Notes: a model not told the origin generated them from the sequence alone. Shown: positions 19,002-25,541, counted from the first letter of the whole stretch. The stretch: DNA of 63,049 nucleotides, filler included, from Intoshia linei (GCA_001642005.1; 6 parts of 6 records of this genome joined end to end with filler, not necessarily neighbours in it), one strand, 5' to 3'. A program made the numbers and translations.

Positions 19002-20023
19002 ATGGTTAAAATTTCAAATAGAGATTATCCTAAAAAATAGTAAAATTTATAATTTAAAATATAATATTTTAGCAAAAATATTTTAAAAGAAGTTAATAAA
19101 ACAAAGGTTGAACGAGATCCCGTTATTGAAGGAAGAAAAGAAATTGATGTAACTAAACCATTTTATCCATGTTATGTATTGTTTATAGATTGTTGACAGT
19201 TATTGTGATCAACTGGTGAAATCACCTTACAGACCTCATTGTTTCAAACCGACAGATAAAGGGAAATCATTCTATGGAATTTATCAAAATTTCCCTAATA
19301 ATCGAGTTGTTCTGTTGTATATAGGATATGGCAATGCTAAATCGCGTCTCCATAATCATTTTAATGGAAAAATATTATCACCGATTGATATGTATTTGAG
19401 ATCATTAGATACGAAAACGAAGAAGAGTGTTTATGTTAAAACTGTCAGGCATAATGATATTATTAGAAATGTAATTTTTATAATCTACTCAATTGAAAAC
19501 GGTAAATTGATAGTGCTACGATTCTATCACAACCCAACACCTTTTTTCAAAGATAATATAGCAGTTAAATTATGATTACTATCTTTTATTTGACTATTTA
19601 AATTTAAAAAAACACGACGTGTATGCCTATTCAAAGTTGGTAACCAATATTTCAAATAGGTGGACAATATTGAATATAGGCATTACCACGGTGATATTAT
19701 CAAATTCACTGAGTTATATTCGATATTGGTTACCAATTTCATAAGTTACCCACGTCGTGTTTTATCCAATAAATAATATTACAATTATTTACATGCAAAT
19801 TTAAGAGCCAGAAGCTATTTTGGTGTCAAAATTTTCAATATAAAAAATTAGCTACCATGTATAGTTAATTCACAGAATTTTATTATTGATAATTAAATTG
19901 TAACTTTAACATTTAATAATTTAATTTTTCAATATTTAGGTTGTGGACCTTGATCAATTTATTAGATGTATGGCAACTTTGTACAATAATCGAATCAGAC
20001 CACCTTTCAACATAAAAAATTAA
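19002..20023 (+). CDS. Stand-alone GIY-YIG nuclease-domain protein (~159 aa, 4 exons)
   Basis: Exons 19002-19039, 19073-19148, 19189-19470 and 19940-20023 join in frame via GT-AG introns of 33, 40 and 469 nt. Motifs YGIYQ-x10-YIGYGNAKSRLHNH and C-terminal DQFIRCM..RPPFN. Confidence 0.78.
19609..19763. mobile_element. Palindromic MITE-like insert in intron 3 of the GIY-YIG gene
   Basis: AAAACACGACGTG..TTGGTAACCAATAT / ATATTGGTTACCAA..CACGTCGTGTTTT. Confidence 0.6.
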
Positions 20024-20602
20024 TATTTCTTCATAAATGCAATAAACTCTAAATTTACATTTCAAATTTGGTATTTTATATAATCTGTAATATTACCCTT
20101 TCTGTTGATCTTTGTACTTGATGTGTTACTTGTTCCTATTGCAATCATTATAGATGCCTCCAGTAAATTTATATTTTCTCCCATATTTTCCATAATTCTT
20201 TTCAATTCTGCTGTAGATAAATATCCGTCCGAGTCTGAATCGAATATCGTAAATATTGCAGAAATTTTATCTTCTGAATCTGTTTTTTGAATTAGCGACA
20301 TTAACTGAAGAAATTCCTCGAAATTTACATCCCCATTTCCTAAATCATTGAATTGAGAATAAATCATTTTAAAAATTACCATCTTCATCAACCATACGTA
20401 TCGTAACATGTAAATCGTGATCTCCAATTCCCTGGCCTAAACTATTCAATATACTGCCAATTTCTTTGATATTAATTTTGCCGTCTTCATCTTTGTCGAA
20501 AATATGAAATATTTCTCTGTATTCTGAATAAAAGTATTATTATTCAGAATGGTACATGAAACTACCTTCAATTTCATCTTTAGTAAAATTAACACTGCCC
20601 AT
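20020..20602 (-). CDS. Calmodulin-like EF-hand protein (150 aa, 4 exons)
   Basis: Exons 20602-20566, 20523-20380, 20339-20097, 20048-20020. EF loops DKDEDGKINIKE, DEDGNGDVNFEE, DSDSDGYLSTAE; fourth loop degenerate. Confidence 0.9.
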
Positions 20603-20679: not shown

Positions 20680-23600
20680 TTACAAATTATGTTCTATTGT
20701 AAAATTGACCTTTTCCGAATCGTTCAATTTAAAGGTTTCGCTTCTCAAAGATGAGCGTAAATTAGATTCTTTAATTTTGCGGTCAGGTAAAGTTCTTTTA
20801 AATTTTTTAGAATTTTTCCAGATTGTTGTATCTGATTTATATCGTATATGAAGAGGCACATTATTTTTTTTCTTTGGATAGATAATAGAATCGAATTTGA
20901 AAGAATTACTAATGGTTCGTGGTTTTATATTATTTACAGTGAGTTCATTTAGCAAACATTCTGAATCTTTGATAATAGATTTTGGTGTCGGCGGATTAGG
21001 TTGTTTAGTGTATTTAAAACTAGGTACATTTGGAAATTCAATGGACGATGCAATATTGATGGGTGATATAGCATTAGAAATCATTGAAATATCCGGATCA
21101 AAAAAACGATTTTGATTTAAATTTGAAAATGATCGATTTTTAGAATCACAACTCAATCTAGTATAATTGAAAGATTCAGGTTTAGTGTCAGAGTTTCGTT
21201 TGATCGATAAATTAAAGAGAGATCCCAATTGGTTTGAAATTTTTGATGTTATATCACGTTTCGGTAAAATGGGCGATGTTGCATATTTTATATGTGGATC
21301 CATTTTGTCAAAACTGTATCTTATAGTATGGTCATCATAATTGAATATACTGGTCCCAAATTTTTTCATTTGTAGACATTCAATCATGAATTTTAACTTT
21401 TCTAATGTTGGTCTGCACTCGACTTTACGCCAACATGTCAACATTATTTCGTATCTAAATTATTAATAGTGTAAGTTTTACATTGTTAGTTACAATTCTC
21501 TCCCCTTGTCGATATTGTAACGATTTATATATTCTGGAACGCTTCCTTTTAAAATTTGATATATGGTATCCATATCTGAATATTTATTAAATGGCCTATC
21601 CGCTAATGTCAACAATTCCCACAAGACAATACCATACATCCTAAGATTTAATTTAATTATAAAATAGATTTATGTTACCAAATGGTAGTTTGATAAGTTG
21701 CCTCTTTTATTTGGATAACATTATTAGAAATTATGTTTTCTGGAGGGATCCATCTTATTGGCGCCAATTGACCATTTTCCAAAGTCATGTAATCGTTCTA
21801 ATTTAAATTAGTTAAATTTCCATTTCAGTTTTTACTGGAAAGAGTCGTTCAATGTTTCCATAATCTCCAATTTTTATACGCATAGAATGACCAATCATGC
21901 AACTTCTTGTTGATAGATCACTAATATAATTATTTATACTAATGTAAATTGTAAAAGAATATAAAAATTTTTTTAAATTATCCACAATGTACCTATGAAT
22001 AAAGCCAAAATCGTTCATACCAATAACACCGTTAATAATATCTATGGAGAAACAAAAAATAATATTTTTTGTCGTTATTTCACTGGAAATTTTAGAATTT
22101 TTCAGAAATGTTTTCAAATTACCCTACAAAATTATTATTATTATTTTACAATATTACTCACATACCATCGGACACCATTCGTACAGCAAAATATAAGGAA
22201 ATTTATCAACACATCTTCCCAAAAATTTTATGACATTTACATGTTTTATTTCTCTAAAAACAAAATTTATAAGGGAACAATAAGATTTAGGTAAATTACT
22301 CATAAGGCAAAGATTGTTGGAGAAATAATAATTGATTTGGTACATTTTGATCATTTTTCATTACTATGGCAAGAAATTGTGTTCTAGAATATCCTTTGAT
22401 TATATATCTTCCTTCTCCGTAAATTGCCTAAACAAAGTTACATCAAAATGTTAAAACTATTGCAGATACATATTTTATGTATATTTTTTACAGCAGAAAT
22501 TAGAAACCTTTACTATTTGTCTCTGTTATGTTCATTTGTTAATATTAAAAAATTTTCATCTTTAACCGTTTCACTGTTTGGCGGTACTCAGTAAATATAG
22601 TTGTAAAAATTTATTTATGCTTTTAAAGCTTTTAGTCAAATCAAATAAAATTTTCTACATTTGCGCATGCATCAACCACATCTCATAATAACTGAGAAAG
22701 CAATAATTTTATTTAATATTTTTATCTGGACCAGTGGTTATCAACCCGCGTTCCGCGGAACCCAGGGGTTCCGTGAAATATAAATGCGATATTTTTCAAT
22801 TTAAAGTTTTTCTAAATTACTGTTGTATACAATGAAACAACATTACTTCTCAAATTTACGGATTTAGGATTTTTCTAAAAAATCTTTGATAGCCCCAATA
22901 GCATATATTTATTTAAAAAATTACCGTATATTTCTGAGCATTCCTAATTATTATTTTTAACAGAAGAGTTTCTATGAAAAATTAAGAATCAAATGGTACA
23001 ATATATAGTTAAAAAAAAATTTCCCTTACAAGATCCTCATATAAGGCGCACTGGCGTATAAAGCACATTCCTAATTTTTCATGTAAAAGGGTGCACCTTA
23101 TACTCCAAAAAATTCAGTATGTTACTTGATTGTATATTAAATTTATAACGTCCATTATTATTTTGTTGATGTTACTTTTAAACACACATAGTGTATTACT
23201 CAATTATCTCGATTCCTATTATAATGGTTTCCAAAGGTGATGCTAAAAAAAATTTATGATGCAACCCGCTGAAAAATGTTCAATATAATGCGGCCGATAA
23301 TAGACGTATTTGAGTTTGATATTGCTGTTTTAGATAAAGATAAATTTTAGCTTATTTGGTGTTAAATGTAAAGCCAAAACTACTTATCTATGATGACGAA
23401 TAACAATTTTCGGCTTAAAATTTATTCCAAATAAACTGAAAGTGATAGTACGTATTTTTCTGGCCACTTTATTTTAGAGTCTAAAATTCAAAGTATTCAG
23501 ACAAATTTAAACATTAAAACTAATTTTTCAGATTTAAATTTGTATATAACGTGGGGTTATTTGTAGGGTGTAATAAAATATTTTTTTACCTTTCCAAAAT

Positions 23601-25541
23601 TTCCTTCTCCAATTTTCCGTATTAATTGAATATTTGATCGTTTGAAAGTGGAATGATAATCTAATAATATGTTATTGCCAATACTTACTTATATAAAGTA
23701 AGCGTTGCTAAAAATGAGTCTGTGTAACCAGTTATTGAGATAACTCAGTCTCATAAATTTCCCCAAAAAAATTAAAACTCAATTTAAATTTTTCAAGTGA
23801 TTACAAGTGAGTACACTGTACTTAGTATTCTGTACTTGACAATAATAAAAAAATCGTCATAAAATCAAAATTTTTCTGTACACTCCAGGGGTCCATGTGT
23901 ACCACATTAAGATTGACTGAGATAGCACACTGAGAATTTAATCATTATCATTAAATTCCTGATTGGTTTTAATTATTTTTATATAGCTTTTAACAATTAT
24001 TAACTATTTTTGTAAATTTACTTACTTTCAGAGTGAGTAATTAAACTTTATACAGGGACTTTACTTTACAACAACTTTAACATTTGAGGAATTTTTAGTA
24101 AATAATTTTATTTACATTGAAATCATAAAATTGGGGTTACTAAACTATTTTTTGGGAACCACCAGTCTAACCCAATTCATATGATAAAACAGGTTAAATA
24201 GAAAAATATATACACATTTTACAACTGTTTTAAACAAACAATAAATAAAACATACTGATTCCTCTGATAGGATCACTCCTGTTGTAATTGATAGATTTTT
24301 TGATTCTAACAACACCAGAGTTGCTATTTAAAAGTGAATATTTAAAATTTGGGATAGATTCAGGAGAATTTTTAAATTTTTTATCATATTTGCGAATAAT
24401 TGACCTTCTCAAAAATTGCTTAGAAAAACATTCAAAAGTGTCACTCTTATCAGGTGAAATGAAATCATTTTTAGATTTCAGGATACAATTTTCTGCATCA
24501 AAGACTTTATTATCATACGTGTCATCGACGTCTTTTAAAATAGAATTGGTTTCAATTTGATTAATATGAGGTAATATTTCAAAATTGATAGCCAACAAAG
24601 AATTTTTATAACCATCATTTTCAAAGGAAGTGTAATGTAAATTGTCTTTAGAGTCTTGATTAGATGGTGGGTTTAAACTTTTGCGTTCTTCGTTAAAATA
24701 TTTACTGGTAGACATGATTGTTCGAACTGTGGATAGTTTAAATGCATTTGATTTTGTTAGATATTTTTTGTAGTCTTTTTCATACGATTCTTTTCGATAT
24801 GAATCATCGGCTTCAAGAGCATCATATTCGTCCTTGTATGCAACTGCGCCAACCTCGAATCTCATGTTTTCTTGAATTATTTTCTAGAATTATACATGTA
24901 AGATTATTTTAATTATTATTAAAATTTTAAAACGAGATGTAATGGAGTTATCATTTTTTGAACTTTTTTAAGATAACCGTAATTTAACAATCCAGCTTTT
25001 GCGACCACGTTAAATGATTTAACTTACATCTATGTTAAGAAAAATTATGAAATTTTTGCAAATTATATTGCGGACGACCAATTAAAGGAACTCATATATT
25101 TGTTTATTTTTGTTTTGTAATAAAAATTGAAAGAGTGTAAACTAACAATTATACATCAAAAAGTACAATTTTCAAATATACATTGATTTTTGATGGCTAC
25201 GTATAAGTATTTATATATTACAAGGTAACATTAAATAATTTTCTTTTTCTAAAACGTGGTTAATGGTCTACTCAGTAGATTCTACTTGTTAATGGTTCGT
25301 TCTTATGTAACAATGCGGTCAGATATTTTCACAAAAGACTTAACCTAATTATATATTATCTAATATAATGTATATGTATTAGATAATTAAGCTTATTTTC
25401 GTCGCAAATAAAATTCACCTTGATATTATTTTGTCTTTTACGATATCTTTTATAAAAAAATAAAAATATCAAAAATCCGAGTAGGAGTATTCCACCTATA
25501 CTGCTGCAGACTATTATCCATGTTGGCGTCTCCGTATCCAT
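20680..25541 (-). CDS. Lemur tyrosine kinase (LMTK/AATK)-like membrane kinase, probable pseudokinase
   Basis: N-terminal TM exon 25541-25419; exons 24883-24256, 23660-23590 (IGEGNFGK) and several short exons between ~22427 and 20680. LMTK-like FLQQSLPY, PYILLYEWCPMGNLK, HSDLSTRSC, KIGDYG, PIRWIPPE. Confidence 0.85.

What the first reader, a model, noticed from the sequence alone, without database searches (positions are those of the whole stretch)
19002..20023. Intron-containing stand-alone GIY-YIG nuclease-like gene in an animal
Seen: four exons splice in frame into ~159 aa with GIY-x11-YIG, the downstream RLxxH and a terminal PPFN that appears only after splicing to exon 4. No TIR, LTR or RT is adjacent. 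Known: animal GIY-YIG domains mostly occur in SLX1 (with a RING-like domain), ANKLE1/LEM-3 and Penelope-type retroelements; none of those partner domains is present. The metal-binding Glu position appears to be Asp (VVDLDQFI). Inference: a domesticated or horizontally acquired small nuclease or nucleic-acid-binding protein of an uncharacterised family, retained in a compact and TE-rich genome, possibly for defence or repair.
Basis: partly seen in the sequence, partly recalled or inferred. Interest (0 to 1): 0.8.

Follow-up and report, generated by a model that had tools for sequence, protein, structure and literature searches.

The report
Small stand-alone GIY-YIG-fold gene, Intoshia
This is a real four-exon gene of the parasitic worm Intoshia linei that encodes a 159-residue protein with the fold of GIY-YIG nucleases; it belongs to an undescribed family shared with snails, and the public gene model has the wrong 3' end.

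Summary
The piece is Intoshia linei contig LWCA01000727.1. The gene is hypothetical protein A3Q56_05089.

**Gene model.** A profile built only from foreign homologs picks exon 3 (E 5e-16) and exon 4 (E 0.012) as the two best of 873 six-frame fragments, colinear. It ignores the read-through tail. Introns 2 and 3 lie at the same aligned residues and phase as in the snail Gigantopelta.

**Family.** Homologs are 162-181 aa proteins of gastropods (Gigantopelta, Babylonia, Hua transcript) and unplaced transcripts. None has a Pfam hit.

**Fold.** AlphaFold of homolog P0005 (pLDDT 77, core 84-93) matches only GIY-YIG nucleases: R.Eco29kI Z 7.6, T4 EndoII 7.0, UvrC 5.8, I-TevI 5.0.

**What it is not.** It is not SLX1, ANKLE1 or a Penelope fragment, and not a recent transfer.

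**Activity.** Intoshia keeps Tyr, Tyr, Arg, His, Asp and Asn at catalytic-type positions. Several snail orthologs have lost Arg, His or Tyr, so nuclease activity is plausible in Intoshia but unproven.

This is a new animal family of a known superfamily, of moderate interest. The joined Intoshia protein was not searched or folded, by rule.

The parts
19002..19039 (+). Exon 1 (ATG, 38 nt, ends in phase 2); basic N-terminus
   Evidence: Sequence. Identical to the start of NCBI protein A3Q56_05089. The Babylonia ortholog also has a short first coding exon ending in phase 2.
19040..19072 (+). Intron 1, 33 nt, GT..AG
19073..19148 (+). Exon 2 (76 nt, ends in phase 0); lysine-rich linker
19149..19188 (+). 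Intron 2, 40 nt, GT..AG. Same aligned position and phase as in Gigantopelta and Babylonia.
19189..19470 (+). Exon 3, 94 codons, the core of the GIY-YIG-like domain. By order in the homolog's model it holds an N-terminal helix, the beta1-beta2 hairpin with S-F-Y/G-I-Y and Y-I-G, helix alpha1 with R-L-H-N-H, two short helices and beta3.
   Evidence: E 8e-7 to P0002. E 4.7e-16 to the foreign-homolog profile. Gigantopelta exon 3 is also exactly 94 codons.
19471..19939 (+). Intron 3, 469 nt, GTAATT..TTTAG. Its first 105 nt (to the stop at 19573-19575) are what the public model translates as a read-through tail.
   Evidence: The read-through tail does not align colinearly to any homolog. The intron position is shared with Gigantopelta, and lies within one residue of the Babylonia position.
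19609..19763 (.). Palindromic, MITE-like foldback element inside intron 3 (13-nt terminal and 17-nt internal inverted repeats)
   Evidence: I8, I11; 2 matches against 0.04 expected.: -30.9 kcal/mol, z -5.8.
19940..20023 (+). Exon 4, 27 codons plus stop. It encodes the C-terminal helix with D-L-D-Q, and the family-invariant Y-N and F-N.
   Evidence: E 0.007 to P0002 residues 125-148; second best of 873 fragments, profile positions 131-155; starts at the same aligned residue as Gigantopelta exon 4.
20041..20046 (+). AATAAA, 18 nt after the exon 4 stop; likely poly(A) signal
   Evidence: Sequence only; inference

Best explanation
**Shown.** Positions 19002-20023 (+) hold a genuine four-exon gene of Intoshia linei for a 159-residue protein. 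It is the orthonectid member of a small family, conserved in spiralians, of stand-alone proteins of about 160-180 aa. So far the family is known from Orthonectida, three gastropod lineages and some unplaced eukaryotic transcripts. Their core has the GIY-YIG nuclease fold: beta-beta hairpin, helices, third strand, C-terminal helix. The public three-exon model is wrong at its 3' end.

**Inferred.** The Intoshia protein probably acts as a small metal-dependent nuclease or nickase, or at least binds nucleic acid through the GIY-YIG cleft. In the canonical order it keeps:
- an aromatic Tyr in strand 1;
- Tyr-Ile-Gly in strand 2;
- Arg and His at the start of helix 1 (R-x-x-x-H-F, as I recall for I-TevI);
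- an acidic residue (Asp, not Glu) at the start of the last helix;
- an invariant Asn 11 residues later, and a second one 19 residues later.

The lysine-rich N-terminus encoded by exons 1-2 would fit nuclear targeting or DNA contact. Like SLX1, it may need a partner. The snail proteins carry a conserved C-terminal P-x-N-F-S-I-L motif that Intoshia lacks.

**My odds.** Real gene with the exon 4 model, about 0.9. GIY-YIG fold, about 0.85. Catalytically active in Intoshia, about 0.45. The single confidence figure of 0.6 is a blend of these.
For: **Identity.**
- the query is 100% identical to A3Q56_05089 of Intoshia linei.
- contig LWCA01000727.1.

**Homologs.**
- an exhaustive HMMER search found P0002 at E 8e-7.
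- these added P0005, Gigantopelta LOC121377727, Babylonia LOC143290795, P0008 and P0007.
- P0008 comes from RNA-seq of the snail Hua wujiangensis, so a spliced mRNA exists in a homolog.

**Exon 4.**
- E 0.007, colinear with P0002.
- exons 3 and 4 rank 1 and 2 of 873 fragments, at profile positions 36-124 and 131-155. The next fragment has E 0.55.
- intron phases are 2, 0, 0 in both Intoshia and Babylonia. Exon 3 is 94 codons in both Gigantopelta and Intoshia. Exons 3 and 4 start at the same aligned residues in those two.

**Fold.**
- AlphaFold of P0005 with 8 rows gave pLDDT 76.9, pTM 0.74, core 84-93.
- of 48,161 chains only 15 reach Z 2. The top 7 are all GIY-YIG proteins: Eco29kI 7.5, EndoII 6.5, AtGRXS16 N-domain 6.2, UvrC 5.8 (82 of 89 residues, rmsd 2.8), I-TevI 5.0, PD-T4-3 4.5, Hpy188I 3.6. 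The next is 2.5.
- 25 of 999 chains reach Z 2, and every entry listed is a GIY-YIG nuclease.
- the Foldseek top hits in PDB and BFVD are GIY-YIG proteins.
- the ESM Atlas neighbours are GIY-YIG clusters (score 0.95 for P0005).

**Residues.**
- column table.
Against: - No sequence profile recognises the family. Pfam, NCBIfam, PHROGs, PADLOC and PDB sequences gave nothing. The best result is P0005 against PF20815 at E 0.12.
- hhalign against T4 Seg/I-Tev domains and EndoII found nothing.
- The fold rests on a model of a homolog, built from a shallow alignment. Structural Z values of 5-7.6 are middling.
- Canonical catalytic positions are not conserved across the family. The Arg column reads R, L, R, L, Q, K, R. 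The His column reads H, H, I, I, L, N, H. The Tyr columns include F and C.
- Which Tyr, which Asp and which Asn are the structural equivalents could not be settled without residue-level superposition.
- No expression data for Intoshia were available here.
Confidence: 0.6

Rival explanations
1. Pseudo-nuclease. The fold is kept, but the conserved role of the family, Intoshia included, is non-catalytic. It would be a scaffold or a nucleic-acid- or protein-binding module.
For: - Arg, His and one or both Tyr are replaced in Babylonia, Hua, Gigantopelta, P0002 and P0007.
- Non-catalytic columns are invariant instead: Y-L-S-S-F-P, W-x-K-W, K-Y-N and F-N.
- There is a precedent in animals. The ANKLE2 Unc-1 domain looks like GIY-YIG but showed no nuclease activity (PMC13179284).
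Against: Intoshia evolves fast. It keeps only about 11 of 28 columns that are invariant in the other members. Yet it retains Tyr, Tyr, Arg, His, Asp and Asn together, as does P0005. That suggests these residues are ancestral and still under constraint in some lineages.
Confidence: 0.35
2. The public three-exon model is right and exon 4 is a chance open frame. The protein would then end in the read-through tail.
For: - The read-through frame stays open for 35 codons in 26% GC DNA.
- A 469-nt intron is long for Intoshia, where the median is 57 nt (PMC6543705).
- The ESM Atlas model of that 166-aa protein still resembled GIY-YIG folds.
Against: - The tail aligns to no homolog, while exon 4 does.
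- The intron position and phase are shared with two snails.
- P0007 shows the same kind of read-through in another assembly.
- About 155 nt of the intron is an inserted palindrome.
Confidence: 0.05
3. A fragment or domesticated endonuclease of a Penelope-like or other mobile element, or a recent horizontal acquisition by Intoshia.
For: - The nearest look-alikes by language-model features and by fold are small bacterial and phage GIY-YIG proteins.
- A MITE-like element lies in intron 3.
Against: - No RT, LTR or TE protein is on the contig.
- No paralog turned up among the collections' proteins, which include the annotated Intoshia proteome.
- Orthologs with the same introns exist in gastropods.
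- Nothing related was found in prokaryotic, viral or metagenome contigs.
- An ancient transfer before the spiralian radiation cannot be excluded.
Confidence: 0.07

Closest known systems
R.Eco29kI and T4 endonuclease II (small GIY-YIG nucleases)
   Same: They are the best structural matches to the family model: Z 7.5-7.6 over 123-127 residues and Z 6.5-7.0 over 102-105 residues. The match includes the helix before strand 1. They are of similar size, single-domain or nearly so.
   Different: About 10% identity and no profile-level sequence match. They are bacterial or phage enzymes, whereas this is an intron-bearing animal gene. The catalytic Glu is Asp here, and Arg is not conserved across the family.
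UvrC N-terminal domain and I-TevI catalytic domain (archetypal GIY-YIG)
   Same: Almost the whole domain superposes: UvrC 82 of 89 residues at rmsd 2.8, I-TevI 82 of 92 at rmsd 3.0. The order of Tyr, Tyr-x-Gly, Arg, acid and Asn is the same. Intoshia R-L-H-N-H-F mirrors the I-TevI R-x-x-x-H-F, which I cite from memory.
   Different: Those domains are fused to DNA-binding or other domains. The hairpin here is about 5 residues longer, and there is no detectable sequence homology.
SLX1 (GIY-YIG plus RING), ANKLE1/LEM-3 (ankyrin, LEM, GIY-YIG) and the Penelope endonuclease
   Same: They are the known GIY-YIG proteins of animals.
   Different: None of their partner domains is present. The protein ends 27 residues after exon 3. 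There are no Pfam hits to their families, and no SLX1 chain is among the structural matches.
ANKLE2 Unc-1 domain
   Same: An animal GIY-YIG-like fold with degenerate motifs, found only by structure (PMC13179284).
   Different: It is part of a large multidomain protein and lacks GIY and YIG entirely. The Intoshia protein keeps them.
AtGRXS16 N-terminal domain (plant)
   Same: A eukaryotic GIY-YIG-fold domain, Z 6.2 over 100 residues.
   Different: It is fused to a glutaredoxin, is of plant origin, and has no sequence relationship to this family.

Membership tests
GIY-YIG nuclease superfamily | Alpha/beta fold: beta1-beta2 hairpin, helices, beta3, C-terminal helix | tested here: met
   The AlphaFold model of homolog P0005 has E66-75, E80-90, H91-100, H106-112, H116-121, E122-128, H139-150. 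Every structural match of Z 3.6 or more in the search of all 48,161 chains, and every entry listed in the second look, is a GIY-YIG protein. Intoshia exons 3 and 4 align over the whole core. The joined Intoshia protein itself was not folded.
GIY-YIG nuclease superfamily | Significant match to a sequence profile of the superfamily (PF01541 and clan) | tested here: not met
   No hit for the Intoshia exons or for P0001 at E up to 10. The best in the family is P0005 against PF20815 at E 0.12. hhalign against T4 GIY-YIG domains gave probability below 1%.
GIY-YIG nuclease superfamily | Tyr in strand 1 (GIY) and Tyr plus Gly in strand 2 (YIG) | tested here: met
   Intoshia has S-F-Y-G-I-Y and Y-I-G-Y-G. 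Across the family the columns read Y/F and Y/F/C, and one Gly is invariant. Whether Tyr 67 or Tyr 70 is the equivalent is unresolved.
GIY-YIG nuclease superfamily | Arg at the start of helix 1 | tested here: met
   Arg is present in Intoshia (R-L-H-N-H), P0005 and Gigantopelta. It is replaced by L, L, Q and K in P0002, Hua, Babylonia and P0007.
GIY-YIG nuclease superfamily | Metal-binding Glu in the helix after beta3 | tested here: inconclusive
   Intoshia has D-L-D-Q at the start of that helix. The homologs have D-D, D-E, E-E or K-D. There is no Glu in Intoshia, and residue-level superposition was not available.
GIY-YIG nuclease superfamily | Conserved Asn after the last helix | tested here: met
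   Two invariant Asn residues (K-Y-N and P-x-F-N) lie in exon 4 and in all full-length homologs. The first is 11 residues after the Asp. From memory, that is close to the 12-residue Glu-to-Asn spacing of UvrC and Eco29kI.
GIY-YIG nuclease superfamily | Nuclease activity | not testable with these tools
   Needs a biochemical assay.
SLX1 | C-terminal RING/PHD-type zinc finger after the GIY-YIG (URI) domain | tested here: not met
   The protein ends 27 residues into exon 4 and has no Cys/His cluster. No Pfam hit.
ANKLE1 / LEM-3 | Ankyrin repeats and a LEM domain N-terminal to the GIY-YIG | tested here: not met
   Only 38 lysine-rich residues precede exon 3. No Pfam hit.
Penelope-like retroelement endonuclease | GIY-YIG domain fused to or next to a reverse transcriptase; multicopy | tested here: not met
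   No RT-like ORF or called gene in the 2.4 kb upstream or downstream. No second copy in the piece and no paralog among proteins of the collections. Spliceosomal introns are shared with snails.

The most novel reading that the evidence does not exclude
A previously unrecognised family of animal GIY-YIG nucleases, restricted to spiralians. It is stand-alone and invisible to sequence profiles. It would be still catalytic in some lineages (Intoshia, P0005) and turned into a pseudo-enzyme in several gastropods. It may descend from a small bacterial or phage GIY-YIG gene captured before the spiralian radiation.
Probability: 0.3. Interest if true: 0.65.

Novelty: new variant of a known kind. Interest (0 to 1): 0.5.

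Why it matters
From memory, animals are credited with very few kinds of GIY-YIG protein: SLX1, ANKLE1 and the Penelope endonuclease. PMC13179284 adds the inactive ANKLE2 domain and counts only SLX1A and ANKLE1 as annotated in humans. A fourth, stand-alone family, kept even in the stripped-down 43-Mb genome of an orthonectid, would add a candidate DNA or RNA processing enzyme to spiralian biology. It also gives a natural series in which catalytic residues are kept or lost.

On the practical side:
- It corrects a public gene model.
- It flags what looks like the same read-through error in a second assembly.
- It shows a family that profile libraries miss and that structure prediction recovers.

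Tried and rejected
1. **Family libraries.** Pfam, NCBIfam, PHROGs, PADLOC and PDB sequence searches on the exons, on P0001 and on all homologs gave no meaningful hit. The C1q-related hits (E about 0.5) are noise.
2. **Single-sequence fold.** AlphaFold of P0001 alone gave pLDDT 34 and was unusable.
3. **P0003.** This 747-aa repeat protein (E 3.6e-4) matched only query residues 40-78, through four tandem repeats. It has no GIY-YIG features, and I rejected it as spurious.
4. **Read-through tail as the C-terminus.** By eye the tail (S-I-E-N-G...Y-H-N-P-T-P-F-F) looked like a GIY-YIG C-terminus with Glu to Asn spaced by 12. No homolog aligns to it, so I dropped the idea.
5. **hhalign.** The family against T4 SegA/F/G and I-TevI/II N-domains and against EndoII found nothing.
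6. **Related loci.** Scans of prokaryotic genomes, viral contigs and JGI metagenomes found no relatives (searches failed on the alignment; some searches were empty).
7. **Source organisms.** The organisms of SRR11676186, ERR6349661/52 and GCA_022702875.1 could not be found in the paper library.
9. **Not done, by the operators' rule.** The joined four-exon Intoshia protein was neither searched nor folded. Exons were handled one by one, by reference.

Full report
**What the piece is.** The word search returned a 100% match of exon 3 to NCBI hypothetical protein A3Q56_05089 of the orthonectid Intoshia linei (P0001, 166 aa). The protein is encoded on contig LWCA01000727.1 of assembly GCA_001642005.1, which is 19,542 bp long. 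The DNA is 23-28% G+C.

Neighbours on the opposite strand:
- an EF-hand gene, whose stop lies only 38 bp from the exon 4 stop;
- an 800-aa protein kinase gene.

The 2.4 kb upstream holds no ORF of 60 aa or more, no called gene, no tRNA and no Rfam match.

| Exon | Coordinates | Length |
|---|---|---|
| 1 | 19002-19039 | 38 nt |
| 2 | 19073-19148 | 76 nt |
| 3 | 19189-19470 | 282 nt |
| 4 | 19940-20023 | 84 nt, including the stop |

The intron phases are 2, 0, 0 and the product is 159 aa. The public model uses exons 1-3 but ignores the donor at 19470/19471. It reads on for 35 codons to a stop at 19573-19575.

**Which 3' end is right.** I tested this without joining exons.

- The exhaustive HMMER search with P0001 found one true relative, P0002 (162 aa, E 8e-7). 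It matched only query residues 40-125, which lie within exon 3.
- Exon 4 alone aligns to P0002 residues 125-148, directly after that match (E 0.007). The read-through tail aligns nowhere colinear.
- I built a profile from five non-Intoshia homologs only and ran it against all 873 six-frame stop-to-stop fragments of the piece. The best fragment is exon 3 (E 4.7e-16, profile positions 36-124). The second best is exactly the exon 4 frame, 19940-20020 (E 0.012, profile positions 131-155). The third has E 0.55.
- The Babylonia areolata ortholog has four coding exons with phases 2, 0, 0.
- In Gigantopelta aegis, exon 3 covers residues 34-127. That is 94 codons, the same number as in Intoshia. Exons 3 and 4 begin at the residues that align, without gaps, to the first residues of Intoshia exons 3 and 4.
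- An AATAAA follows the exon 4 stop by 18 nt.
- The intron is long for this genome: 469 nt against a median of 57 nt (PMC6543705). About 155 nt of it is a palindromic, MITE-like insertion.

**The family.** Profile and word searches gave the following members.

| Protein | Length | Source |
|---|---|---|
| P0005 | 181 aa | two Logan transcript-like contigs |
| P0006 | 168 aa | Gigantopelta aegis LOC121377727 |
| P0009 | 168 aa | Babylonia areolata LOC143290795 |
| P0008 | 170 aa | Logan SRR32833658 |
| P0007 | 110 aa | GCA_022702875.1 |
| P0004 | 206 aa | a longer call of P0002 |

- SRR32833658 is RNA-seq of the freshwater snail Hua wujiangensis (PMC12222893). A homolog is therefore transcribed and spliced.
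- The P0002/P0004 contigs share a 5' end and carry a long 3' UTR, as mRNAs do.
- P0007 is exon 3 plus what looks like a read-through of the same intron. It is probably the same annotation error in another assembly.
- None of these proteins has a precomputed or fresh Pfam hit.
- Nothing related turned up in 185,579 prokaryotic species genomes, in IMG/VR or in JGI metagenome contigs. Those scans are pattern-limited.
- No paralog from Intoshia appeared in either protein search.
- No paper in the library links GIY-YIG with these taxa.

**The fold.**
- AlphaFold2 on P0005 with the 8-row alignment A3 gave mean pLDDT 76.9 and pTM 0.74, with the core at 84-93. A3 contains Intoshia exons 3 and 4 as separate rows.
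- The order of elements is helix, strand, strand, helix, helix, helix, strand, helix.
- VIA-align against 48,161 PDB representatives found only 15 chains at Z 2 or more. The top seven are all GIY-YIG proteins: R.Eco29kI 7.5, T4 EndoII 6.5, AtGRXS16 N-domain 6.2, UvrC N-domain 5.8, I-TevI 5.0, PD-T4-3 4.5 and Hpy188I 3.6. The next is 2.5.
- In the second look at Foldseek's own candidates, 25 chains reach Z 2 or more. Every entry listed is again a GIY-YIG nuclease.
- The Foldseek top hits in PDB (E 0.015, probability 0.98) and in BFVD (E 0.009) are GIY-YIG proteins.
- ESM Atlas neighbours by features (0.85 for P0001, 0.95 for P0005), and by structure for the Atlas model of P0001, are GIY-YIG and Eco29kI clusters.
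- At sequence level the link is not detectable.
- The Z values are middling. What carries the case is that only one fold family matches, that small domains are covered almost completely, and that there is a clear gap to unrelated chains.

**Catalytic positions.** Intoshia has the following, in order:
- S-F-Y-G-I-Y in strand 1;
- Y-I-G-Y-G in strand 2;
- R-L-H-N-H-F at helix 1;
- D-L-D-Q at the start of the last helix;
- Y-N, and then P-P-F-N.

P0005 has the same set. Across the seven family members in alignment A3 (P0005, P0002, P0006, P0008, P0009, P0007, Intoshia):

| Column | Residues |
|---|---|
| Strand 1 aromatic | Y, Y, F, F, F, Y, Y |
| Strand 2 Tyr | Y, Y, F, Y, Y, C, Y |
| Arg | R, L, R, L, Q, K, R |
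| His | H, H, I, I, L, N, H |

- Each full-length protein has at least one acid in the two acidic columns. P0007 has no reliable residue there, because its read-through tail begins before them.
- Both Asn residues are invariant.
The conserved G-[FY]-[YF] three residues earlier is the likelier motif counterpart.
- I could not get residue-level superpositions. The exact equivalents of the GIY Tyr, the Glu and the Asn therefore remain open.
- Intoshia is a fast-evolving lineage. It keeps about 11 of 28 columns that are invariant in the other members. That it still retains Arg, His and both Tyr suggests constraint on them, and hence possible activity.
- Their loss in several snails argues that the family-wide role need not be catalysis.
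- ANKLE2 gives a precedent for an inactive GIY-YIG-like fold in animals (PMC13179284).

**Comparison with known animal GIY-YIG proteins.** There is no RING (SLX1), no ankyrin or LEM domain (ANKLE1), and no RT (Penelope). No copy multiplicity was seen. Dunin-Horkawicz et al. 2006 (PMC1564403) list no such stand-alone metazoan family. I file it as a new, divergent family within the GIY-YIG fold superfamily, not as a member of any named family.

**Origin.** Introns shared between an orthonectid and gastropods place the gene at least in their common spiralian ancestor. A recent transfer or a TE origin in Intoshia is rejected. An ancient capture of a small bacterial or phage GIY-YIG gene cannot be tested with the sequences at hand.

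**Limits.**
- All statements about it come from exon-by-exon work and from homologs.
- No Intoshia expression data were accessible.
- The taxa of P0002, P0005 and P0007 are unknown.

Noticed in passing
window 19609-19763: A 155-nt palindromic, MITE-like foldback inside intron 3. Its terminal inverted repeat is AAACACGACGTG(T) and its internal 17-nt inverted repeat is AAGTTGGTAACCAATAT. DNA fold is -30.9 kcal/mol, z -5.8. There is one copy only in this 19.5-kb piece.
   Followed up: partly
window 19471-19575: The public model A3Q56_05089 translates 35 intron codons as its C-terminus. The NCBI protein should be 159 aa ending in ...PPFNIKN, not 166 aa.
   Followed up: yes
L008 1312-1644 (GCA_022702875.1, JAKGBN010041240.1): P0007 (110 aa) is exon 3 of a close relative of P0005. 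After ...PYE it appears to read through the same intron, which looks like the same annotation error in another assembly. The contig (2.4 kb) is too short to hold exon 4.
   Followed up: partly
window 20062-20427 (-) and about 20680-25650 (-): A convergent EF-hand gene ends 38 bp from the exon 4 stop, so the 3' UTRs must be tiny or overlap. Behind it lies an 800-aa single-pass membrane protein kinase gene with many short introns.
   Followed up: no
structure row 4: The ESM Atlas model of P0001 also resembled chordate MSANTD2 (TM 0.49 over 110 residues). This is a lead that MSANTD2 might contain a GIY-YIG-like module.
   Followed up: no
homologs P0002, P0005, P0006, P0008, P0009: All non-Intoshia full-length members end in a conserved P-x-N/G-F-S-I/L-L motif and start with a K-rich M-x-x-K-K-K-x-I-K-L-P stretch. 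Intoshia lacks the C-terminal motif. These could be a partner-docking motif and a nuclear signal.
   Followed up: no
window 32909-33187 (+): A 92-aa ORF with a Cys-x2-Cys...His-x4-His-like stretch (C-L-R-C-N-C-N ... H-Y-V-Q-V-H). It may be a zinc-finger exon. The only hit was a chance-level one to ERM_C.
   Followed up: no
L005 about 23875-24000 versus annotated gene end 37431: In Gigantopelta the frame stays open past the last residue of P0006 (...FSILG), and the annotated gene runs 13 kb further. The annotated 3' end may use an extra exon or be mis-modelled.
   Followed up: no
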